DNA of 61,630 bases, counting the filler, from Dugesia japonica (Eukaryota): the NCBI GenBank assembly GCA_001938525.1. It is 5 parts of 5 records of this genome, joined end to end, with 100 filler letters (N's around TTAATTAATTAA, not from the genome) between each part and the next. Parts side by side here need not be neighbours in the genome. Positions count along the whole stretch, not along the records: positions 30,269 to 51,831 come from MQRL01543935.1; 4 more parts are not named here. One strand, 5' to 3'. Made by a program: the position numbers and the translations under genes. How positions within the stretch are numbered: position 1 is the first letter of the stretch; the number at the start of each line of letters is the position of its first letter. The notes beneath the pieces were generated by a model. That model was given only the letters and a program-made list of their open reading frames with translations, made no database searches and was not told the DNA's origin. Shown here one piece after another: positions 30,269-48,679 of this stretch.

Positions 30269-30280
30269 TTATATACCTTT

Positions 30281-30452
30281 GACTGCCCATATCTTGTAAT
30301 AATATCTTAAAAAATATCAAGACTGCCCATATATTGTAATAATATCCTAAAAAATATCAAGACTGCCCATATATTGTAATAACATCCTAAAAAATATCAA
30401 GACTGCCTATAGCATGCATAAATATAGAGACTGCCCATAACATGCATAAATA
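30281..30452. repeat. 40-bp tandem repeat (GACTGCCCATATATTGTAATAATATCCTAAAAAATATCAA x3) plus two shorter variants
   Basis: Units start at 30281, 30321, 30361, 30401 and about 30429. Confidence 0.9.
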
Positions 30453-30559: not shown

Positions 30560-32510
30560 TCCAACCAAAATATTTTTTTTGAATTTCCCGCCAAAAAAAA
30601 TTTTTTTTTTGAAATTCCCGCGAAAAATATTTTTTTTGAATTTCCCGTTAAAAAAAAATTCTTAAAAAAAAGGTAAAAAAAAAAGGTAAAAAAAAAGATT
30701 AAAAAAATAAAAAAAAAATTTGATCCGATCAAAATTTTTTTGATCCTAAAAATCTGATCCGATCAAAAATTTGATCCAAAAAATCTGATATGATAAAAAA
30801 AAAATTTGATCCCAAAAATCTGATAAAAAAAATCCGATCAAAAAAAAAATTTGATCCCAAAAATCATACCACCAAAAATCATAACCTCATCGTTATGTGT
30901 TTTCGAGCCCTCTACCGGGGGGGCGTTCCGCCCAGCGCTGTGCATGTGATGACAATGCGGCACTATCCCCCTACTTCTATATTTGAATTATCCAAGGAAG
31001 GACTAATCACAAAATTACCAGTAATCATCGGAGATGGAAACAACTATCAAAGTAGTTACAGAATATTGCTGTTGGGCTATGGGATCATCCACAGCATGGC
31101 ACAAAATGAAATTGGTAAAAAAAACTTAAAATAAAGGATCAAATCGAATGGATAAAAGGATTGAAAGGAAAAGTGTCGAAGTAAAATTGATAGGAGTAAA
31201 TCAAATGGATAAAAGAATCGAAATGAAAGAGTCGAAATGAATGACAGAATTATTCTAGTGAAGTGACGAATTGTAGAATCATTGAGGATGAAGCTGAGAT
31301 CAAATATTGAGACAATTCGCAGAAGTGTTAAAATAAAGTTACGAGTGAATAAAAAGTGATGGTCGAGGATCCATTCTATTTATGCCTTCTGAAATTTTTT
31401 TAATATGGATATAACCTTGTCCTTATTAAAGTATACTCTCAGAATACTGAAAAGAGGATAAATAAAAGTAGGTAGATAGTGGCTCATATCTCCTCTTGGT
31501 TTAATCTCTAAAAAGGCCCCCTCCCCCCACCCTTTTTAAAAAGGGGATAAATTTTTTAAAAGCAATTAATAAAGGGGATAAAATTTTAAAAAGGGGATAA
31601 AATTTTTTAAAAAAATTAAAAAAAGGGATAAAATTTTTAAAAGAAATTTAAAAAGGGGATAAATTTAAAAAATAAACTAAAAGTGGGAATTAATTAAATA
31701 AATTTAAAGTGTGAATAAATTTTTAAAAATAAATTAAAAATGGTGTTTAATTTTTCCTCTGTGTTTAGTTAGGAATTTATTCGGTGAGGTGGAATTAGGT
31801 CAATTTTTGACTGGTTTAGGTGAAAGTGGTCAAATTTTTCCTCAGTTTTGGTCAGTTTGGGTAATTTTTGGAAGATTTGGTCAAGTATTTAATCGGGAAT
31901 GGTAACTTGGTTAATNTTTAGTCAATATTGGTCAAATATTTCTTCGGGATTACTTGGTTTGGGTAATTGGTTGAATTTTTCCTCGGGATTGGTAATTTTT
32001 GGGTGATTAAAGTGAAATTGGTCAAATATATCCTCGGGAATGATTAATTTGAGTTATTTTCAGATTATTTAGGTGAAATTGGTTGAAAATTTTCTCGGTG
32101 AGGTAGAATATGGTCAATATTTGAATGGTTTAGAGTAATTTTTAAGTGATCTGGTCAAATAATTCCTCGGGATTGCTCAGATTGGGTAATTTTTGGGTGA
32201 CTTTGTCTAATTTTTCCTGAACATTGGTCAGTTGGGTTAATCTTTGGACAATCTTAGTCAATTATTTACTCACATTGTACAGTTTTGGATGATTTGATCG
32301 AATATTTCATCTAGATTGATCATTTTGGGTAATTTTTGTGTGGTTTTAGTGAAATTGGTTGAAAATTTCTCGGTGAGGTTGAACCTGGTCAAACTTGGTT
32401 TGTTTTAGGTTAATTTGGTCAAATATATCTTCGGAAATGATTAATTTGGGTAATTTTTGTGTGATTTGGTTAATTATTTCATCGGGAATGGACAGTTTGG
32501 GTTGAATTTT
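30560..32510. repeat. Complex array of successive degenerate short repeats
   Basis: TTTGAA(T/A)TTCCCG x3, TTTGATCC/GATCCGATC, AAAGGGGATAAA x5 (31538-31665), and a TTGGTCAA..CTCGGGA / TTGGGTAATTTTT array (31780-32510). Confidence 0.75.
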
Positions 32511-32822
32511 AAGGAAATTCATTATAAAAGTCGAATTTGTTTAAATTTTAAAGTTTTTTAAGAATTTTTATCAGATTGTTTTGTAGAAATCCGAGCAAAC
32601 CGTTCATGTTGTTTAAATAATATGAAAATTTAAAATTTTTTTAATGAAATCTTTATGTGAATCTGGGTGAACAGTCTAAAATTTTGAAAAAAATGTTCTT
32701 TATCTCAGATTCCAAAGATTTGTATACCAAACTGTTGAGAACTTTACGGCGATCATTTCTAAGAAATAAAAATTTTTCGATAAACCTTTCCTTTTCAAAT
32801 AAGTTAAGAAAGTATCAATTAG

Positions 32823-33340
32823 ATAGAGAAATTTCGAGACCAATTTTTTTATATTCCATTCTCGAAAGGTTGTGGCACATTTATTTGCAATTGGTATTTA
32901 ATTGTGAAAATTCTCTTTACTTTCAATCCGATTATCAATTTGTACATACTCAAGTGGCTTTTCGGTCAAAAGTCTGATGGAGTGTTAAATTTTTATAAAA
33001 CGCTTTTTCTCTTGGTATGGAATTCAGAAGATTTTTATTACACCAAATATTTCCCTATAATGACTGTGTGCAAAGTCAATCTTATAGTTTTGGGACAAAT
33101 ATCCAACAATTATTTAACGTTTTGTATTCATCCAGAAAATCTGTTCAACAGATACTTTGTTACTATAATAGCTATTTGGTTGATGTTTCTCACTAATGTC
33201 ACATTTATCGGATTGTTAACGTTTCTTAACAATTTACTTTTCTTCAAGGTTAGAAGGTCTCTTATAAAAAGAATTTTACGGCATAAGAAAATTAATTTTT
33301 CTGAAGTAAATAATGGATATTTAGTCTTCATTATCACGGA
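32823..33340 (+). CDS. Innexin fragment (TM3, extracellular loop 2, TM4), intronless here; the frame continues to 33656 into unrelated sequence
   Basis: SKGCGTFICNWYLIVKILF..NLYILKWLFG (TM3), YFPIMTVCKV..LGQ....TFCIHPENLFNRYFVTIIAIWL (FPxxTxC...C.LP.N..NEK...W motif), R..LIKRIL..NNGYLV. Confidence 0.8.
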
Positions 33341-36231
33341 TGATCCTCAAGAGATATTGGAGAAATCCGCAGCAATAGTTGTTACAATGGAACAATCAAG
33401 GGGTACAGACCCAGAGATAAATCAACAAGAATCAGAGATTCTTGATAGCTGTAAAATCATAGTTGAATTCAGAAAAGATGTTCAAACCACGCTAAATGAG
33501 CAATTAGAGAAGTTAGCTAGCGTTGAATTAGCTGACAAAGACATAGATAGCATAGTGCAAATTCTATCTACAATCAAGCACGAAACATTTATTTTAAGGC
33601 AATTTCAGAAATTTGTCGTAAAATATGCAAAACAATGCAACATGATTAGTATTTGAGAAATGCCCAACTAGTTATACATATGCCAAAGGGGGCATATGTA
33701 ATAACTGAAATAAATGTGCGAGAAACAGTAGCTAAGTTGACGTCTCACTTAAAAAGAATGAAGCGTAAAAAATTTGAACGAGACATAAGATAGAGAAAAA
33801 ATGATTCTGTTATGCGGCATATTGCGAAATGTGAAAACAGAATTGCAGGCTAAAGAGAAGGTGGGTGAGGTAGCCACTATTAGCCAAGATAATGTATTTG
33901 CTATAAAATATATGGAATTAGACCAGCTCCAAGAGGCTCAGACTATTCCACGGCGATTGGAAAAGAGATCCAATCGAATATAAGAAACAATGAAAATATT
34001 AAAAATATTTTGAGTTGGAAATTGTCATTAAATATTTCAACGGATACATGAAAGGAAATAGTACCATTATTACTACCTCTGGCTGGTACGCCAAGTAGTT
34101 ATCAAAATGAAATCTGTATGCTAATACGGAAAAAAGATCTAGCATTTAGGCAAGACCCAAAAGGACAAAGTGAACTTTTTGTACCAAATCACCTAATTCA
34201 TAATCTATCTTGAAATTACTGTCTTCTTAATGTTTTTGCGTATCTGATAAATATTCATCAATCATGCATCCTTCTTGATTTTTCTCTTTTTTATGATTCA
34301 TTTGGCCNAGGAATATATTTTGCGCCTTTTAGTAATATTCATGGCAAAACATTATATGTAGCATTCTTTAAGTGATTGCATATGTGTTTACCGCTGCCAC
34401 AATATCACTCACAAAAAATTGCAAAAATAGATAGTATTATTTATACAATGTACAAAACGAAACACTACGTGTTATACTTCTCAAACTTTAAATAAATGAA
34501 TATTTCCTTAGGACTTGGAATACAGTGAATTGCTAATGAATTCCTTTTTAACAAAAACTAAAACATAAACCAGGATTTTTTCATTTTCGGCTTTGAATAT
34601 TTGACTTTCTTCGTTGATTCATAAGAAAAACGTTCTTAAAAACTGACTTAACATTAAACTAGTAATACAGAGGATTGTTTAGTCGATATAAAAATTTATC
34701 GTGTACACTCATTACAATAAATATAAAACAAAATATCTATGAAAAGTATTGATAACTATTAGCTTGGTTTGTGCAATATTTTAATAAAAAGAACTAGAAA
34801 AATGTCGTTAAAAAATATGACAATCTAATTAAGGTGATAAGGAGTAAACTTCCGTTTCTGATGAATATTTGTTTAAAGATGTCAGGAAAGACATCTATCT
34901 CTTTTTATGTAAGAGTTTGGATTATAGAGGTCTAAAACCAAAGAAACAAAGTTAATAAGATTATATAAAAACAGAATTAATGAAATCAAAAGAAAGCAGA
35001 ATTTATGAGATCGAATGAAAAGAAAAAAAAATAATGTTCAAATAATAGTCATGAAAATTGAACTACTTTGGTAAAGATATTAGAGAGCATGACTGAACAA
35101 GTTTTTTAATGTTATAAAAATACAAGTCTTTACTAATTTGACAATGAAAGCGAAAACTAATCACATATATAATGAATAATTGCGATTAAATGGCAGAATT
35201 GACAACAATTACTCATGAGTTCAGAAAGTAAAGATAAAATAATTTATTGGTGAGATCTAAAAGCCGTAAGGAAAGAACTTACTCGGGCGACTAAGAAGCA
35301 AAGCTAAAGTAATGTGTCGATAAGACCTAAAGAGAAGTTGAATAGAAGTACCAATCAAATAAAATGAAAGCAGATATATTTTAATCATAGAAATAAATAT
35401 TTCAATACAACATAAATCAGGTGAAAACAATTGGAAAACAATCGAAAGTGGAACGGGAATTTTATCACTATGAGTTGACCTTCTAAGTTTTGATTTATAA
35501 ATTTTGAACTTTTTAAAAATTTTATTTTTGAATTGAGATTAATTCCACTTTGTCTTCGTCAAGAATTAACTTTTTATAATTAATTTGGATAAATATTTAT
35601 ATTTTTTTTAATATGTGACCTATTTGTATGGCTAGCCCAAAATTCATTATTTTCAGTTTTTTAATTTCTCAAATAGAGATTTAAAGCTTCTATATCAGCA
35701 GATTCTGAGAATAAAATAAGAGCGTATATTTCAACATTTAAATAACTTTAATCACGATATATACATTTTAATTGGATTTCATAAGCTATTTAATATTTCT
35801 AAACTCACACAATTGTTGATTTGCCTTTGCGAAATCCCAAAGACAACTCAACATTAATGTTCAAAATATTAATTAAAATTTTTTATTAAATTATACAATA
35901 AAGTGTTGAAATTCTTTAAAACATAATTTGTTTCAGAATTTCAGTTGGTGATTTAAAATAAGGCAAAATGTGATAAAAATTATATTTATAAATAAAAAAT
36001 GTTTAGCTTATTGTAATTTCATACAAGACTTAAATTACTTTTATGTTTTCTTTAAATTTTGAAATCTAAAGTATTTAATAAAATATTCTGCTAAGAATTA
36101 ATTTTCCAATACTTTTCATTTTCTATTCAAATTATTTGTAATAGTTTAAATATTTTATCAAAATTTGTCTCAAATTTAGTAATTAAATTGATTTAAATTT
36201 GTTAAAATATTGATTTATATTAGCATTAATT

Positions 36232-39200: not shown

Positions 39201-42200
39201 GTGTATACCATGGATAAAACACAGCCGATGCTCAACCTTCATAAATTTAAAATTAATTATAATCCCGAAAATCCTGGGATTCTACGTTTCTAATAATAGT
39301 AATAATACAGTAGAACCTCACACAACGGGACCCACCGGGACCGAAACTGAGTGATGTTAAAGAAAGGTATGACGTTATAGAGAGGTTCAACTGTAATAAT
39401 TATAACAAAAACAAATAAGTATTGTCTATAATATTCAAAATCATATTTAATGGAAATAAAACTAACTCATTGTTGATGGTGGATTATTTTGATCTGTATA
39501 AAAAATGTGACAGAAAAACGAAAAAGAAATAATTTTATATAATAACAATAATAAAAATAAGTATATATAACAATATAAAAAAATCTTAATATTAATATCA
39601 TAATTATCATTAATAATAATAATAATATTGGGCTTCAAGGCTTCATTTAACTCTTCTTCCATCTTAATACAACATTTACTCTTCGTGCATTTCTTCCTCA
39701 TTGCAAGAAATTCTAGGGTAGATACTCCGCAGCCGGCATAAAGTTGACAATGTCTCGAAATTAATAATAATTAATAAATGTCTCGTTATTATCTACCTCA
39801 GGTCCATGCGGGTCTTTGTACTAACCCGTCTTTAGAAGTAAATCGTCTTGTTGCTAGTTGCTCAATTTCGTCTGGTAGAGAACAATGTAACTCCAATTTT
39901 ACAATATAAATTTATTTTATAACAACACCTACTAATCTTCTTCGGCATTCTGCAGTAAAATCGGATTATATTACATAAGGTTTATTAATGCTTTAAAATA
40001 ATTTTTTATCATTAAAACAATTAAAGTTATTCTAAAAAACTTAATTTGTTTGCGGAAAACAAGACAGATAAATCACGAGATGAACGAGAACCCTATTAAC
40101 ATTCATTCATAACTGGAGTTCTAATTTCAATTGAGATATTACTAAATTGTTCTATGGTTTATTAATCACTAATGTATAAATTTATCATTGCATTATTGCT
40201 ACTAAAATTATAGTTTAAATAACTGTTACTTCTAAGTTAATATACAAAATAACGAATAACTCCAAAAAGTATGGGTCATACTATAAAATAAAATGATTAA
40301 TTATGAAAAAATTAAAACTCCAATTTTTAAATAGTCATATTATTTGTTTTTAATAAAAAAATCCTTTTTAAGAATTTATTCATTAAATATATCAAAAATA
40401 TCAGATTCATCTTCGAAAGAAACAATATCAATAGAGTCATTTAAAACCATTGCACCTGAAAACTTATTTTTAAAATGCCTCCCAAAAAAATCATGTCTAG
40501 AAATATGCCAATTATCATAATTTGGCTAAAATCCTGCACCATTAAAATAGTTCACGATATTTCCAAATTCCAATTAATCCCATGGTTTTTTGACTCACGA
40601 ATTAATTGTAATATAAGATGGTATAGGGTTTCCAAAATTGAAAAAATTGTGATGAAACGCAATTAAGAGAGCCTGATCATCTTGTTGTTTTTTAAAAAAT
40701 CTGTTATTAATACGTGACTGCACGATTCTTTCGTTGTCATTATCAGATTGCTTTGATAGAAAATCTGCAACTATCCTTTTTTCATCCTTAATGCACTGTC
40801 ATTACATATAATGTTGACTGAGAAATTCAGTCAACACCCATTGTCTTTCCAATAGGTTTTTCACATGAGTTGAGCTGACCGAAAGTTTGTGGTTGATGTG
40901 AGCGATGAAATTTGTCACTAATAAGTAATACTTTGATTGAAAGTACTAATACACCTAGTTCTCTATCGGCGGTGGAATATTTTTATTGAGTGTGTATTAA
41001 TTTTTACTAGAAAGGAATGCAATACGATGCAGCTTAATTCTTCATTCTCTTCGTTCAAACTTCTTCCAATACCCGACCCTGGCGCATTAGTGCATAACAT
41101 AAATGTGCGATATGATTAAATAAATTTTGTGTTCTATGTCATCTTTGAAGTGGATCAAGATGTCATTAATATAAGCATAAGCAACAACTTGAAAACTGTT
41201 TAAACACTTATCTATATGTCTTAAAAATGGCTGTGATGAATTCTTCAACCCAAATGACAGTTTTCTGTATTCAAATAGTCCAAAAAGTACGATTATTGCT
41301 GTTCTGTGCCTGTATGATTCTTGGATTGGTATTTGATTGTAGGCTTTCCTTAGATCCAGTGTGAAGAAAATAACTCATCCATTGCTTTTGTTTAGTATAC
41401 CACTCATTCTAGCAAGTTGATATATGTCTGGCTTAGTTATTCGGTTCAACATTTAGTAATCATAACATAGTGATTGACATTTTCGCCAATTCTTTTTGTG
41501 GAAATAGCATATCCTTTTGTTTGATGATTTCTTATCTATTATTTATCCTTCTTTGGCTTTGATTGGGTTGATTTCATCATGTATGCTGCTGACTAATTTT
41601 TCCATGTTGGTTTCCCAATCGTCTAATTTCCACAATTTGATCGTCTATTTCGATGTGATACTCAGCTAATTGTGTTTTTTAATCAAGGTTTAAGTCTATA
41701 TTCTGGGGCTTAATTATGTCTCATGTACTTTTGTAGGGATTTCAAGAACTTCAATTTAAGGATGTTGGAATTCTGGACTTCTGTGTGGTTCTATGATTTA
41801 AAAACTGTTTCATTTCCGTAAGTTGTTTATATGGAATCTTGTAAGAATTATTTTTGGGATGCATCCGCTTATTCATGGCTTCTATTATTGATATTGTGAT
41901 TCTGCATAATATTTCAGCTTGAAATTTTTCATATGGGGCTTCTTCCTGTGGATCTATTTCATGTGACACCAAGTACAATATAACTGATGGCAGATCGATA
42001 AATAAATAAGATATTTCGTTTTTAAATTGCAAATATTTGATAGCTCAAAAACTACACCCACTTAGGCAAACCAATTTACTGCGTTTGAAAAGTCGTTTGG
42101 CATTTGATCTGGATGGAAATTCTGATTTAGCCATATTAACAACTTTTTGAATTGGTAATTTTTATTTTGTCTACACTATTTTATTTGTTTATTAGTATAA

Positions 42201-45200
42201 AATATTAATACTACAGTTACTTTGTAAAGTCTACCTATTATATTCATGATATAATGAGAATAATAATAGCAAACTGCCACTGTTACTTCTGACATCAGGC
42301 ATTGTGTTCATAAAATAATGGGAATTATCTATTAAATTGCACTTTTAAAAAATTTATTAACATTTACAAATATGATTTAATTTCAATTTTAATTTTAATG
42401 TAGAATTTTTATTAAGAATTTTACACTATCCTTTTGTATATATTATGAATCATATACAGAATATTACAATTTGATATTTTAAGAAAATTTAATGTTTTTT
42501 TTATCTAGAAAATATTATGGTCAAAATATTACATTGGAAATTCGAAAAATCTCCTGCAATATTTGAACAATAATAACGAGCAATATCTGGTTTGTGAAAA
42601 CGAATTTGTTATGTCCAATAAAGTTGTTTATTTTATCATATTATTAGTGAAAATTTATTAATCTATTCAGTCAAAAACCGAAGTGAAAGAATTCGATTCG
42701 AATATTATTTCAAGTTTGCGTAAATCGCGCGGAAAGATTTATATTTCTCTGGAAAATGGAGAGATTTGGAAATATGATATTATAAATCGAATATTTGTTC
42801 ATTTATTTTCGTTTCAATCTAAAATGAAAGCTTGTGTAAATTTACCAACTAATTTCAGTTTATTTCTGACAGAGGTTTAATTTTATTAATTTCTTATGGA
42901 GTTGTGAATATTTGGAATTTATCGATTTTAGGATGGACAAGTATTGACTACACGCTATCGGAATTCTAAAAGAGTACCAGAATTAGATGGTTGTGTAGAC
43001 ATTATAGCATCATATGGAGCAATTGTTGTTTGTTATTTCGGAAATGGAGTTTGTAAAATTTATGTAATGATTTGATTTATTATGATTTTTAATTGTTATT
43101 TATTGATTTTTACTTATGGATTTATTTTAATGTATTTAATTGTGCAATTTTAAATTCACTTTTCCTTTGGTTCCAGAGAATCACTACTATTCAAAATCAA
43201 TGATTAGTATTTATTATGCATATTAATATAATAAAATCAAATAAATCTGATCCTAAATTAAATTTTAAACCAATTTTTGAATAACTGGATATCGTTTATA
43301 TTATTATCTTTAAAATGTTCGAGTTGTCCATCATAAAAATCACAACCAATAAAATTTGACTGAAAAATCTTTAATTTATGTATAAAGCAGTGTTTTCGAA
43401 TATTGGAATTATTTTAAAAGAGAATTTTTGAGATTATGCAATATGTTTATCGATCTAGTTTTGATATGTTAATAGTTGGTATATCTTATTTCTAGGAATA
43501 TTTTAATTTTTATTGAGTATTTTTAGAATTTAGTAAGAATAAAGAAATGTAGATATTTATTTTCAAAAAAAAACAATTTTTATCCCGCATTCACGAACGA
43601 CAAATAACAATTGAACTTGTTGATATTGTTATTTAAAATTGTATTTAAGAATATTTCACTTTGGAATTTATCTATTTTCCTTTTTTTCTTTAAAGAAGTT
43701 TTTGTATTAAAAATGTTCTTTTAAAGTTGTGAGTTCGAATATATTAATTATGAAATTATAGAATTCATTTAATATAAAAGCTTTGATCAAAATTTTGGTT
43801 TATTTATATTTACTTTATTTTATATTGATATTGGATAACAATTCGATATTTCGACATTGTCTTCGTCAGGAAATCGAAATGTTATCCAATATCAATAAAA
43901 AAAACCAAAATTTGGATCAAAGCTTTTATATTAAATGATTTCTAAAAAACGATCAATGGTTATGTCCAACAATTATTCTCGCAATAATTGTAATTATGAA
44001 ATTATATAATTATAATAAATTAATATAATATAATACAATTTTATGTTTTAATTTATTTTGAGCTTTTGGAATTTCAAATTCATATTTTTATTTTATTTTC
44101 TCAACTATTACAATCTAATTAATACATTTAACGAATTTTTCATCTTTTTTTTATTTGTTAATAATATTAATAAATCGCCTTTTTACAAAAATAATTCTCA
44201 TTCAATGTTTTTATCCTTAATCCTCCAGGATTTGTTTCCTGAGAATGAATAAATATGTTTTCATTTTTGTAAAATTCATGTTTTCAATCACTTTTTCCCA
44301 AAATGTTTTGATAAAAATTGTATAATATCTACATGAAAATTTTTTGACAAAATTATAAATACTTTACAACAGTCACTCCCAAAATGAGGTTACGAGGAAT
44401 ATCAGTGTTTCGTTGGCGATCAAAAAGGGTTCATTAAAAAAAGTAACTAATTATCAATTAAAAAGTCAATTCCTTACGAAGACTAAGTCGAAAATTTGAA
44501 ATATTGTATAAAAAATTGATTGAATCTTTTATTTTAATGGGGTACGTCCAACAATTATTCTCGCAATAATTGTTATTGTTAAACAAATACCAATTATATA
44601 TTAATAAAATAAAATCTAATTCCACTGCTTCATAAAATAGTTGGGAAATCTCCTATATAGAAACGAATATTTTAGAAATTTCAATATGATAATAATGTAA
44701 CATTATAATGATCATACCAAGCTTAATAAAATACTTTATATATAATATCTTCATTCGACATTTTTATACAATTTTGTTGTTTTGAATGTTTTTTCTTCAT
44801 ATTTCGAAATTTATTATTTTTAAATATAAATATCAAAATATTATTTTTTGAAAACAATTTTCATTTTTAATTGAAAAAAATCGATAAAATAGTGTAAAAT
44901 TATTTTTTTATTTTCTATAAAAAATAAAGATCTGCTTTTTTGAAAATATTAAAAACTATTTCAACAAATTATCACATTATGTTTAAGATTTTACATTTGT
45001 TTAAATCCATGATGCACCGATATCAACAAAACGAGTTTAAAAGCTTTGAAAATAAATAAATGTTTTTTTAGATATTTAACAAAACAAATAATTAATATTT
45101 AATTTATTATGAATTGCGAATTTTTTAATGTATGATTTTAGGCCAACAAGAAAATGTTTGAATTGGAAATTTCTCAATCTATAAAATTTGCAAAACTTTC

Positions 45201-45489: not shown

Positions 45490-46084
45490 TTTATTGTTTA
45501 TTGACTTTTTTAATTGATTTCTTACAATTTTGGGTATTTATATAATTTATGATAGATTAGAAATAATTTTGTTATTTATATTATTTTATATTTATATTAT
45601 AAATATTACAATCAAACAAACCTTGTGTGTATATATGATTGCTTGTAGATCATGATAGAAATTTATTTAAATAAAATTGGATTCGGAAAAAGTATCAAAA
45701 ATCCTTCTTCTCAATATTAACAGTTTTCAATTTATATTTAACCAATTTTTTGATTTATGTATTTTTTAAATTTTATTGAAGACAAACTTTTCTGTTATTT
45801 AATACTTTGTTAGTTATGATGTTGAACTATGTTTTTGTAAAAAGAAAAATTCATTTTAATATTTTCAACATAAAAACTCGTAATAAGATATTTATTTGGT
45901 TAATGATAATAAATTGATTTGACTCGGTTTATCAGGTAAAGATTCATCTTCCTGAAAAAATTTAAACATTTCTCTTACTTAAACTTTATTATTATTTGTA
46001 GTATTAATATTTTAATACTAATAAATTCATTTGTTTAAATATTGTGATTGAAATAAACATTACGAATTCAAAACTTGTTATTTT

Positions 46085-48645
46085 GGCGAAATCAGAATTT
46101 CCAGTTAACAATAATGATGTCAGAAGTGGCGAAGAAAACCACAACCAAATCTAAATGTCAAATTACTCAAACTCAACAAATTGGTTTGCCCAAGTAGATG
46201 CAGCTTTTGAGCTATCAAATAACCGAAGTTCAAGGAAAAAATAATTCCACTGTCTTACCAGTCTGCCACCAGCTATATTGAAATTAGTGTCACATGAAAT
46301 GAATCCTCAAGTTGAAGACCCATACGCAAAATTGAAAGCTGCAATACTAAGCAGAACCACAATGTAAGCCATGAATAAATTAATGAATCCCAGTACTGAT
46401 TCTTACAAGACTCCATCAAGAAAGCTGTCAGCAACATATGTGATGAGATCAACGCAATCAAATGAAACAATTTTACAAAATTATTGAGTCTCATCGAAAT
46501 CCAGAAACTTCCAATATTTTGAGACTGAAGTTCTGGAATTTCTACCAAAATACATGTGACATCATTTAGTTCAGCACAGAGACAAAAGCCTTGAAGAATT
46601 AGCTCAGTTAGTAGAATATCATTTTGAAATGGATGATCAAAATGTCGAAATTACTGACATCAGGCAATTGGAAAATCAGCATGACGAAATCACAATCAGA
46701 AACATACGTGATGAGATTAACGCAATCAAAGCCAAACAAAAACACATTAAAGATAAGATATAAAGAAAGATATATGTTACTTCCAAAGATAACTTGGCAA
46801 AAATTCAAGAAAATGCCAATCTCAATTCGGAAAAAGGCAATGAATCTCACTGAAATCAACCACTGAAATCCGCGACGAACCCAAACAGTCGGTAGAAGTA
46901 CAATTTATTTTCACAGTCTCAGGTTGGTCAAACAATAATCAAAATATATTTCTAATTGAATCAGATGCAGATATCAGCATCCTACCATATCAAATGTTTA
47001 TCCAAAATAACAACAATGTTAAACATTCATTTTTAAAAGCAAATGAAAAAAACATAGTTTATGGTGAAAAGATAATTTTACTTCACATACTAAGTATTCA
47101 GCCACATTTTAATGGACGTTTACAGTAGCAATTAAAATGTTGAATTAAATATTGAAATCAGATGTTTTGTCAAAACATTGTCTTTTAATAGATTATCGTA
47201 GCAATCAGATCTTTCAAGGACGACAGCAAAGTAATGAAATTTTAAACCCAGAATGCGCAACGGTGCTGCGAATAGACACCGATGGTATACCAGTTCATCA
47301 ACGTGCTCAAAGATTGGGACCATTAATTATGAAGAAAATCAAACTTGAATTTAAAAAATTAATTAAACAAGACATCGTCCCACCAAGCAGTAGTGAATGG
47401 GCATATTAAATGGTATGTATCAGGAAGAAATATGGAACATTTTGACAATGCGGCAATAACCGAATGTTGAACTCAATAACTAAGCCAGATAAATAACCAC
47501 TTCCTAGAATGAGTGACATCCTAGACAGAATCAATGGATGTAATATTTTCTCCACAATGTATCTGAGAAAATCCTACCGTCAAATTTCAATCCAAGAATC
47601 AGACAGGCACAGAACAGCAATAATTACACCATTTGGCATATTTGAATACAGAAAGATGCCATTTGGATTGAAAAATTCATCACAAAAATTTAAAAGACAC
47701 ATGGACACTTGCCTTAGCAGTTATCAAGCCTTTGCTTCTGTTTATGTTGATGACATTTATATCTACTCTAAATATGACAAAGAACACATAATTTATTTAA
47801 AAGAAATCATGTTGGAACTTGAAAAACACGGATTGATCATCAACTCAAATAAATGTCAGCTCAATAAAAATGAAGTAAAATTTCTAGGATTCTCGATATC
47901 CAAGAAAGATATCAAACCTATCAATGAACGAATAAAAGCTATCAAACGTTTAACAACACCAAGGAATGCAAAAGCCCTACAGAGAATCTTAGGCACTATG
48001 ACATTCTATCAATGAATGATTCCAAAAATGTCATAGACACTTGCTCCAATTCATGAACTTACAACACCACGTAATAAGAAGAAATATTTTAAATGTTCAT
48101 GACTATACGACAAGGCATCTCAAGAAGCAATACAAAACTATCTGAAGTGACTGAAATGGCAACTGCTGGTCAATAAAAGACATTTATATTATGCACTGAA
48201 GCGTCACCAGATTGCTAATGCTAAGATTAATTTCAGATCAATATTTTTGGCTAAAAATGAGAGCTCAAATCCGAAATTGGTGTGAACACTGTCTTAAATG
48301 TCACGCAAATAAAGTTTCAAGTCACACGAAGGCACCGATTGATACATTACCAAACTTAGGAAAATTTTAAATAGTACAATTAGATATAGTAGGACTTCTA
48401 CCAACTATCAAACGTAAAAAATATTTGCTTACCATGATTGATAAAGAAACCTCATGGACTGAAGTGGCTCAGCTAAGAGAAATCACTACGTCAAGCATAG
48501 TTGCAGCGATAATAAAAGACTGGATACGGCGTTTTAAAGCACCAGAAATCGTGATAACAGACAACGGACAACAATTTGTTTCAAGAGAGCTCAACACATT
48601 CTGTGATACATTTGAAATTGAGCATATGCGTACTACACCAGTAGG
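46085..48645 (+). mobile_element. Ty3/gypsy retrotransposon remnant (gag-PR-RT-partial RH-IN)
   Basis: WFAQVDAAFEL gag, FLIESDADISILP (protease DSGA-like), PSSSEWA, TAIITPFGIFEYRKMPFGLKNSSQ, VYVDDI, NSNKCQL..VKFLGF, WCEHCLKC, WIRRFKAPEIVITDNGQQF. Many stops. Confidence 0.92.
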
Positions 48646-48679
48646 TAGATAGTGGTGCATGGACAAAATTTGAGTGCAC

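What the first reader, a model, noticed from the sequence alone, without database searches (positions are those of the whole stretch)
43745..44006. TSD-flanked 230-bp fold-back element with a hammerhead ribozyme in its loop
Seen: two inverted arms (43761-~43847 vs ~43873-43942) enclose a minus-strand hammerhead core CUGACGA-stem II-GAAA-UAUC. The plus-strand arm starts essentially at the sequence that follows the predicted cleavage site (ATC|GAA(A/T)TGTTATCC), then continues into a conserved tail ending in a hairpin. A 16-bp direct repeat flanks the whole unit. Known: Penelope-like elements carry minimal hammerheads with a palindrome replacing stem III and often insert with an inverted partial terminal repeat. 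Inference: this is a non-coding, ribozyme-defined retro-element (PLE-mobilised, retrozyme/SINE-like) inserted in an intron.
Basis: partly seen in the sequence, partly recalled or inferred. Interest (0 to 1): 0.8.

Follow-up and report, generated by a model that had tools for sequence, protein, structure and literature searches.

The report
Penelope-type hammerhead retroelement fossil, inverted pair
A 226-bp insertion in an AT-rich invertebrate genome consists of two head-to-head truncated ends of a Penelope-like retroelement, one carrying a minimal hammerhead ribozyme motif; this is a tidy example of a known kind of element, not a new one.

Summary
A fold-back at 43766-43991 has arms about 91% alike. 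It is bracketed by a 20-21 bp direct repeat with one mismatch. Its loop carries, on the minus strand, a complete minimal type I hammerhead (core 43845-43869, predicted cut between 43845 and 43844). A descriptor for this motif hits once in the 21.5 kb piece and never in 300 shuffles.

Two decayed relatives lie nearby (44433-44573 plus strand; 35540-35612 minus strand). In the first, the core and the same terminal hairpin (25/25 identical) sit on one strand, so the unit reads hammerhead, body, 3' hairpin.

The finding is therefore two 5'-truncated unit ends joined head to head, and only one of them has the roughly 50-nt tail. This matches published Penelope-like element (PLE) insertion anatomy:
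- a minimal hammerhead with an extra base after A9, a G10.1-C11.1 pair and palindromic 15.2/16.2 positions;
- an adjacent inverted truncated copy;
- a one-sided tail;
- an AT-rich target.

Not supported or not shown:
- Rfam hammerhead models do not match.
- The active monomer fold is 12 kcal/mol above the hairpin.
- No PLE gene is in the window.
- There is no tandem array.
- The intron location has no support.
- No further genome copies could be reached, so "dedicated non-coding family" cannot be told from "truncated PLE ends".

Verdict: a new member of a known kind.

The parts
43746..43765 (.). Left copy of the target-site duplication (20 bp; 21 if 43745 is counted)
   Evidence: 20/21 match to 43991-44011. 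The next best direct repeat in the same flanks is 11 nt. Repeats this good are rare in the piece.
43766..43875 (-). Minus-strand partial unit. It has 5-6 nt of helix I 5' strand, the minimal hammerhead and the body. It ends without the tail.
   Evidence: Sequence read; aligned to the plus arm and to copies 2 and 3.
43840..43874 (-). Minimal type I hammerhead motif. Helix I 5' strand 43874-43870; core CUGACGA 43869-43863; bulged A 43862; helix II 43861-43853; GAA 43852-43850; palindromic AUAU 43849-43846; C17 43845; helix I 3' strand 43844-43840.
   Evidence: Descriptor gives 1 hit against 0 in 300 shuffles; pattern expected 0.03 times per window; core conserved in copies 2 and 3. No Rfam hammerhead hit.
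43876..43991 (+). Plus-strand partial unit. It starts at the base equivalent to G1.1 (within about 6 nt), then body 43876-43941, then tail 43942-43991.
   Evidence: Arm alignment. Homology to copy 2 ends at 43991; the 30 nt beyond it match copy 2 at about the chance level (12/30, counted by eye).
43967..43991 (+). Terminal hairpin (9-bp stem, 5-nt loop CTCGC) at the 3' end of the unit; inferred reverse-transcription entry site
   Evidence: 25/25 identical to 44549-44573, while the bodies differ by large indels. Also present in the fold. The role is inferred from PMC11167929.
43992..44011 (.). Right copy of the target-site duplication
44433..44573 (+). Copy 2, an older related unit with core and tail on the same strand. 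Hammerhead-like 44466-44499 with G5 replaced; body; tail 44540-44573. The 5' limit is unknown and no duplication was found.
35540..35612 (-). Copy 3, a decayed fragment related to copy 2 over about 70 nt. Its core is changed at C3, C11.1 and 15.1/16.1, and no tail is recognisable.
   Evidence: (74% over 70 nt, E 3e-6).

Best explanation
The finding is a fossil insertion made by Penelope-like-element (PLE) machinery.

The source is an RNA unit built as minimal type I hammerhead, AT-rich body, 3'-terminal hairpin. Whether that unit was the end of an autonomous PLE or a short derivative of one is not known.

Inferred steps of the insertion:
1. The AT-rich target was nicked on both strands 20 bp apart, each nick following 5'-AATT-3'.
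2. Both 3'-OH ends primed reverse transcription.
3. One cDNA started beyond the terminal hairpin, giving the plus copy with its roughly 50-nt tail.
4. The other cDNA started at a more internal site, giving the minus copy without a tail. It ran through the hammerhead to a few bases upstream of the core.
5. The two 5'-truncated copies were joined head to head near the hammerhead, and fill-in of the stagger made the 20-bp duplication.

Shown: the anatomy, the duplication, the motif, the family relationship to two other copies, and the end of homology at the hairpin.

Inferred: the enzyme, the two start sites, and the idea that the plus copy's 5' end reflects a hammerhead-cleaved template.

At this locus the hammerhead is a passenger. 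It is a single minimal motif locked in a long hairpin and is not expected to cleave on its own.
For: 1. Motif. All four features that PMC4209133 names as not built into its search are present: an extra base between A9 and 10.1, a G10.1-C11.1 pair, palindromic 15.2/16.2, and a short helix I. The descriptor is specific here: 1 hit against 0 in 300 shuffles.

2. Family. The core string recurs at 44476-44493 and, decayed, at 35542-35559. None is expected by chance. Copy 2 carries the core and the identical terminal hairpin on one strand.

3. Insertion signature. A 20/21 duplication starts exactly where homology to copy 2 stops. It is far longer than the duplications of cut-and-paste transposons.

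4. PLE-specific anatomy. Published PLE features are an inverted 5'-truncated copy adjacent to the unit and a 30-40 bp tail at one end only (PMC8557442). A PLE protein nicks and extends both strands, prefers AT-rich DNA with ATT, and starts reverse transcription in a stem-loop about 90 nt 3' of the hammerhead cut; the tail lies between two start sites (PMC11167929). Here the hairpin lies 91-116 nt (copy 1) and 50-75 nt (copy 2) after the cut-site equivalent.

5. Timing. Arm divergence (about 9%) and duplication divergence (1 in 20-21) are similar, as expected if both arose in one event.

6. Precedent. Solo minimal hammerheads, and pairs on opposite strands 100-700 bp apart, are reported as remains of truncated PLEs. 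The cores of copies 1 and 2 are 627 bp apart on opposite strands.
Against: - No PLE reverse transcriptase or GIY-YIG gene is in the 21.5 kb piece. The only RT and integrase belong to LTR-type elements.
- No Rfam hammerhead family matches, even at E <= 10 in 551 nt.
- Helix II has only 3 bp, whereas published PLE minimal hammerheads mostly have 6-8 bp.
- The hammerhead-competent monomer fold is 12.3 kcal/mol less stable than the hairpin that buries C17.
- Covariation is not significant with three copies.
- No further copies could be found, so the family is known from three loci in one window.
- The host species was not identified.
Confidence: 0.6

Rival explanations
1. The unit is a dedicated short non-coding retroelement (SINE-like or retrozyme-like, about 120-250 nt) that borrows PLE enzymes. 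The 5' end of its RNA is made by hammerhead self-cleavage, and that is why the plus copy begins at G1.1.
For: None of the three copies has coding sequence next to it. The plus arm starts within about 6 nt of the cut-site equivalent; random 5' truncation over roughly 200 nt would land there about 3% of the time. The core and the hairpin are the best-kept parts between diverged copies. Animal retrozymes have been argued to derive from PLE terminal repeats (bioRxiv 10.64898/2026.07.22.740005).
Against: Severe 5' truncation of an autonomous PLE gives the same picture. The junction is ambiguous because the strands of helix I are complementary. There is one observation only. In the one PLE studied, reads ending at the hammerhead cut site were not detected and cleavage was not needed for insertion in vitro. 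There is no tandem array.
Confidence: 0.22
2. A single unit (hammerhead, body, tail) was inserted or already present. The left arm arose later by a local inverted duplication at the DNA level, through replication template switching or fold-back repair. On this view the flanking direct repeat is partly low-complexity coincidence.
For: The right flank lies in an AT-rich, microsatellite-like stretch. The arms differ by a 17-nt indel. The left arm overlaps the left repeat by 10 nt with 8/10 complementarity to the right arm.
Against: The 20/21 repeat includes non-repetitive letters and is rare in the piece. It brackets the whole fold-back exactly, with its right copy starting where family homology ends. 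In a single unit the hammerhead would lie on the same strand as the tail, as in copy 2; here it lies on the opposite strand.
Confidence: 0.08
3. It is a fold-back or miniature inverted-repeat DNA transposon, or a hairpin RNA (microRNA-like) gene, and the hammerhead-like letters in the loop are chance.
For: The locus forms a long near-perfect hairpin. There are weak hits to plant microRNA precursor models (E 0.004-0.25).
Against: Those hits score 21-26 bits against gathering scores of 75-230. The element is asymmetric, with a tail on one side only. The duplication is 20 bp. Copy 2 shares the core and tail but is not a comparable fold-back. The motif is not expected by chance and recurs in the other copies.
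Confidence: 0.05

Closest known systems
Minimal hammerhead ribozymes of metazoan Penelope-like elements (Cervera and de la Pena 2014, PMC4209133)
   Same: Type I topology. Helix III is reduced to A15.1-U16.1 plus palindromic 15.2/16.2. There is an extra unpaired base between A9 and G10.1, a G10.1-C11.1 pair and a short helix I. It occurs as solo motifs and as nearby pairs on opposite strands, and the monomer is expected to be inactive.
   Different: Helix II is only 3 bp with a 3-nt loop, against the published 6-8 bp. No flanking PLE gene is seen. Cleavage is untested.
PLE insertion architecture: inverted 5'-truncated copy plus one-sided 30-40 bp tail (PMC8557442); reverse transcription primed on both strands and starting in a stem-loop (PMC11167929)
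   Same: A head-to-head pair of truncated copies with both 3' ends facing outwards. Only one end carries an extension of 40-50 nt, and that extension ends in a hairpin. The target is AT-rich and both inferred nicks follow AATT. The duplication is long.
   Different: The whole insertion is only 226 bp, with no open reading frame or pseudo-LTR tandem. The hairpin here is A/T-rich, not the AC-rich loop of the Anolis element.
Metazoan non-LTR retrozymes (PMC7229834; bioRxiv 10.64898/2026.07.22.740005)
   Same: Short, non-coding, low-GC units with a type I hammerhead. Duplications are longer than 4 bp. They are probably derived from PLE terminal regions.
   Different: Retrozymes are head-to-tail tandem repeats with canonical hammerheads that have loop-loop contacts. 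Here there is no tandem, the motif is minimal and Rfam hammerhead models do not match.
Twin-priming 5' inversions of LINE-1 insertions (from general knowledge, not tested here)
   Same: An inverted 5' part is joined to a direct 3' part inside one target duplication, and both target strands are used as primers.
   Different: In twin priming the two parts come from different stretches of one RNA. Here the two arms cover the same stretch, so two templates or two passes are needed. There is also no poly(A).

Membership tests
PLE minimal hammerhead (min-HHR) | Catalytic boxes CUGANGA and GAAA followed by U16.1 H17, in type I order | tested here: met
   Copy 1 minus strand 43869-43845.
PLE minimal hammerhead (min-HHR) | An unpaired nucleotide between A9 and 10.1, and a G10.1-C11.1 pair | tested here: met
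   A at 43862; G 43861 pairs with C 43853. The same holds in copy 2; criteria.
PLE minimal hammerhead (min-HHR) | Helix III absent or tiny, with palindromic 15.2-16.2, so that two motifs can pair as a dimer | tested here: met
   AUAU (copy 1), AAUU (copy 2) and UUAA (copy 3) are all self-complementary. With A/T-only letters this is about a 50% chance event per copy.
PLE minimal hammerhead (min-HHR) | Covariation and compensatory changes in helices I and II across a family of copies | tested here: inconclusive
   Three copies only. Helix II pairs never vary in copies 1 and 2. 136 of 500 shuffles reach the observed score.
PLE minimal hammerhead (min-HHR) | Self-cleavage (weak, as a dimer or with protein help) | not testable with these tools
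   Energy estimates only: the active monomer fold lies 12.3 kcal/mol above the MFE.
Penelope-like element insertion | Reverse transcriptase plus GIY-YIG endonuclease gene in or next to the copy, or in the genome | tested here: not met
   There is none in the 21.5 kb piece. The rest of the genome could not be reached, so absence from the genome is not shown.
Penelope-like element insertion | 5' truncation with an adjacent inverted 5'-truncated copy | tested here: met
   criterion.
Penelope-like element insertion | A tail extension of some tens of bp at one end only | tested here: met
   43942-43991 is present on the plus copy and absent from the minus copy.
Penelope-like element insertion | Direct pseudo-LTRs (partial tandem) | tested here: not met
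   No direct repeat of the unit lies inside the duplication. The sources describe this feature as frequent, not obligatory.
Metazoan non-LTR retrozyme | Head-to-tail tandem repeats of 150-450 bp, each with a hammerhead | tested here: not met
   Tandem Repeats Finder finds no such array. Copies 1 and 2 are on opposite strands.
Metazoan non-LTR retrozyme | Canonical type I hammerhead with helix I / helix II loop contacts | tested here: not met
   No Rfam hammerhead hit at gathering score or at E <= 10.
MITE / fold-back DNA transposon | Symmetric terminal inverted repeats reaching both ends, and a short duplication of fixed length | tested here: not met
   The right arm ends about 45 nt before the element end, and the duplication is 20 bp.
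tRNA-derived SINE | tRNA-like head, and a poly(A) or simple-repeat tail | tested here: not met
   ARAGORN finds nothing. The 3' end is a hairpin, not poly(A).

The most novel reading that the evidence does not exclude
The unit may be a very compact non-autonomous parasite of PLEs, built only of a minimal hammerhead and a 3' hairpin. In this reading the plus copy's 5' end at G1.1 records a template RNA that the hammerhead had cut in vivo. If many copies in this genome start at that base, it would be the first genomic footprint showing that PLE-type hammerheads define the 5' ends of retrotransposed RNAs. That role has been proposed since 2014 but was not seen in the one element studied biochemically.
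Probability: 0.2. Interest if true: 0.55.

Novelty: new member of a known kind. Interest (0 to 1): 0.33.

Why it matters
The function of the hammerheads carried by Penelope-like elements is still unsettled. One view is that they process the RNA; the other is that they are passengers. This locus shows on 226 bp all the hallmarks of a PLE-type insertion: a long duplication, a head-to-head pair, a one-sided tail that ends in a conserved hairpin, and AATT at both nicks. Its inner junction sits at the hammerhead cut site. A genome-wide count of where such copies begin and end would bear directly on whether ribozyme cleavage shapes the template. As it stands this is one more example of a described class in an unidentified invertebrate.

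Tried and rejected
- Rfam, whole piece at gathering score and 551 nt at E <= 10: no hammerhead family. The only hits were sub-threshold microRNA-precursor matches caused by the hairpin shape.
- Search for more copies. Viral contigs gave 0 hits with the tail and core patterns. Metagenome contigs gave 0 hits with the tail. Prokaryotic genome contigs gave 0 hits with the tail. Metagenome contigs gave 87 hits with the core pattern, all in GC 36-72% prokaryote-like contexts without helix I or the cut-site letters, so these are chance matches.
- Host identification. Ten window ORFs are not in the protein collection. The innexin exon has no word-search relatives. The RT fragment has one 47% relative on a 1.2 kb contig. 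The species stays unknown, so no census was possible.
- PLE genes. Pfam on the ORFs around the copies and a listing of every stop-to-stop frame of 65 aa or more in the piece showed only LTR-type RT and integrase and an innexin exon.
- Target duplications for copies 2 and 3: none better than background.
- A long-range inverted repeat around copy 2 (44283-44308 / 44499-44524, 77%) was judged too weak to interpret.
- Gapped identity figures for the AT-rich bodies were discarded as inflated, because the control stretch beyond the tail scored similarly.
- A literal search of papers for the core string found only unrelated primers.
- The large protein search, structure prediction and covariance-model building were not used. 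No protein is at stake, and three copies in one window give a model nothing further to search.
Full report
WHAT IS THERE

The 226 bp from 43766 to 43991 form a fold-back. Its arms are 43756-43805 with 43898-43947 (50 nt, 92%) and 43818-43847 with 43873-43902 (30 nt, 93%). With gaps allowed, 71 columns are identical (about 91% of aligned positions) plus one 17-nt A/T-rich indel. The minus strand folds into one long hairpin (-88.7 kcal/mol, z = -12).

The 25-nt loop and its borders spell a hammerhead on the minus strand, read directly:
- helix I 5' strand AUUUC (43874-43870);
- CUGACGA (43869-43863);
- an unpaired A (43862);
- helix II GAC / loop AAU / GUC (43861-43853);
- GAA (43852-43850);
- A15.1-U-A-U16.1 (43849-43846);
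- C17 (43845), with the cut before G 43844;
- helix I 3' strand GAAUU (43844-43840).

IS IT MORE THAN CHANCE?

I wrote a descriptor with these requirements: helix I of at least 3 bp, CUGANGA, 0-1 bulged base, helix II of 3-8 bp, a loop of 3-8 nt, GAAA, a palindromic 15.x/16.x stretch, then U and H. It hits once on both strands of the 21.5 kb piece and never in 300 dinucleotide-preserving shuffles.

The flanking direct repeat is longer than reported: 43745-43765 and 43991-44011 match at 20 of 21 positions. Over all positions and spacings of 100-500 nt (8.5 million comparisons), only eight loci reach 20/21. The other seven lie in satellites or dispersed repeats.

RELATIVES IN THE WINDOW

The string ACGAAGAC-NNN-GTCGAAA recurs exactly at 44476-44493 (plus strand) and with two changes at 35542-35559 (minus strand). 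None is expected by chance.

Copy 2 (about 44433-44573) carries the core with G5 replaced. Forty-five nt further on, on the same strand, it carries the tail of copy 1: 44540-44583 against 43958-44001 at 89%, with the 9-bp-stem hairpin 25/25 identical. Beyond the hairpin the two loci match at about the chance level (12/30, counted by eye).

Copy 3 is related to copy 2 over about 70 nt (74%, E 3e-6). Its core is decayed at C3, C11.1 and 15.1/16.1.

The unit therefore reads hammerhead, body, terminal hairpin on one strand. Copy 1 is two partial units head to head. The minus-strand unit has the hammerhead and body but no tail. The plus-strand unit starts at about the base after the cut site (43876) and runs through the tail to 43991, and the right duplication begins at the next base.

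Only copy 1 keeps an intact core. The other two look like neutrally decaying dead copies.

HOW IT MOST LIKELY AROSE

Three papers supply the comparison.

Cervera and de la Pena 2014 (PMC4209133) define the minimal hammerheads of PLEs. They list features that emerged without being required by their search: a base between positions 9 and 10.1, a conserved G10.1-C11.1 pair, palindromic 15.2-16.2 and a short helix I. All are present here. They also note solo motifs, and pairs on opposite strands 100-700 bp apart, as remains of truncated PLEs. The cores of copies 1 and 2 are 627 bp apart on opposite strands.

Craig et al. 2021 (PMC8557442) describe PLE insertions as heavily 5'-truncated. They often have an inverted 5'-truncated copy next to them and a 30-40 bp tail at one end only.

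Frangieh et al. 2024 (PMC11167929) show the following for a purified PLE protein:
- It nicks and extends both target strands.
- It prefers AT-rich DNA with an ATT motif.
- It starts reverse transcription inside a stem-loop roughly 90 nt 3' of the hammerhead cut.
- The tail corresponds to the stretch between two start sites.

Copy 1 fits point by point:
- Both outer ends are unit 3' ends.
- Only one end has the 40-50 nt extension, and it ends in the conserved hairpin. The hairpin lies 91-116 nt after the cut-site equivalent in copy 1 and 50-75 nt after it in copy 2.
- The target is AT-rich.
- Reading the pre-insertion site, both inferred nicks follow 5'-AATT-3' on their own strand.
- The 20-bp duplication follows from the stagger.
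- Arm divergence (about 9%) and duplication divergence (one mismatch in 20-21) are of the same order, as expected if one event made both.

The steps involving the enzyme, the two start sites and the joining are inference. The anatomy is shown.

THE JUNCTION AT THE CUT SITE

On the plus strand the junction reads GAAAT-C-GAAAT-G (43870-43881). The first GAAAT is the complement of helix I's 5' strand. The second is the start of the plus copy.

The two strands of helix I are complementary by design. Any inverted junction near the core therefore lengthens the apparent arm, and the true breakpoint is uncertain by about 6 nt. A start at G1.1 is what a hammerhead-cleaved template would give, but this is one observation. 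In the Anolis element no reads ending at the cut site were seen, and cleavage was dispensable in vitro.

IS THE RIBOZYME LIKELY ACTIVE HERE?

Probably not as it stands.
- Rfam's hammerhead models give nothing, even at E <= 10 over 551 nt. The published descriptions of minimal variants suggest these models would miss them, so this counts against a canonical hammerhead only.
- Helix II has 3 bp, against 6-8 bp in most published PLE motifs.
- In a 69-nt context the hammerhead-competent fold lies 12.3 kcal/mol above the MFE, in which AUCGAA pairs with UUCGAU and buries C17.
- A dimer would need a second motif on the same strand, and none is nearby.
- Covariation cannot be judged from three copies. 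Helix II is invariant in copies 1 and 2. The 15.x/16.x palindrome changes in a compensated way in all three copies (AUAU, AAUU, UUAA), but 136 of 500 shuffles do as well.

SURROUNDINGS

The host is an invertebrate animal with AT-rich DNA (GC 20-33%). An innexin-like terminal exon lies at 32823-33656 (Pfam PF00876, E 1.3e-9). Its stop codon is 10 kb upstream of the finding.

The finding sits between two diverged (79%) LTR-retrotransposon pol fragments in head-to-head orientation, 41090-42147 minus strand and 46070-48650 plus strand (RVT_1 and rve). In the plus-strand fragment the pol frame is interrupted at least three times: at least two frame changes and at least one stop, judged from the frames listed. 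I did not count the interruptions in the minus-strand fragment.

Nothing supports an intron location. The piece contains no PLE gene, no tRNA, and no head-to-tail tandem of the unit.

WHAT COULD NOT BE DONE

The species was not identified and no other part of its genome was reachable. Copy number, the distribution of ends, attachment to PLE genes and covariation therefore remain open. This is why 'truncated PLE ends' and 'dedicated non-autonomous family' cannot be separated.

COMPARISON AND VERDICT

The motif passes the sequence-level tests for a PLE minimal hammerhead. The insertion passes the architectural tests for a PLE-type insertion, except for a linked PLE gene and direct pseudo-LTRs.

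It fails the tests for three other classes:
- metazoan retrozyme, because there is no tandem and no canonical hammerhead;
- MITE or fold-back transposon, because the ends are asymmetric and the duplication is 20 bp;
- tRNA-derived SINE.

It is a new member of a known kind. Interest is modest (0.33). The most novel reading not excluded is that copy starts at G1.1 record ribozyme cleavage in vivo. That reading would be worth more, and a census of copy ends can test it.

Copies were compared as they stand.
- Short patterns typed into the DNA search were copied from the window itself.
- Nothing in the window looked human, and N runs were left alone.

Noticed in passing
window 41090-42147 (-) and 46070-48650 (+): Two diverged (about 79%) fragments of an LTR-type retrotransposon pol region lie head to head and bracket the 3.9 kb that holds the finding. 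Pfam gives RVT_1 and rve, and there is a protease-like stretch. In the plus-strand fragment the reading frame is interrupted at least three times (frame changes and a stop).
   Followed up: partly
window 32823-33656 (+): An innexin-like terminal exon (Pfam PF00876, E 1.3e-9) has no relatives in the word-based protein search and is not in the protein collection. It marks the host as an invertebrate that is poorly represented in public protein data.
   Followed up: partly
window 30272-30452; 31535-31760; 31815-32518: Three satellite-like arrays: a 40-bp unit containing GACTGCCCATAT, a short AAAAAGGGGATAAAATTTT-type unit, and roughly 51-nt G/T-rich units in at least 9 copies.
   Followed up: no
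window 35540-35612 (-): A third, decayed copy of the hammerhead-bearing unit lies 8 kb from the finding. Three copies in 21.5 kb suggest the family is abundant in this genome.
   Followed up: partly
window 43745-43765 / 43991-44011 and the bases around them: Both inferred target nicks follow 5'-AATT-3' on their own strand. The first 10 nt of the left duplication resemble the unit sequence at the point where the tailless copy ends (8/10), which may be priming microhomology.
   Followed up: no
window 42509-43072 (+): Several short open frames (50-72 aa) have non-repetitive composition and no Pfam match. They could be decayed exons or retroelement remains.
   Followed up: partly
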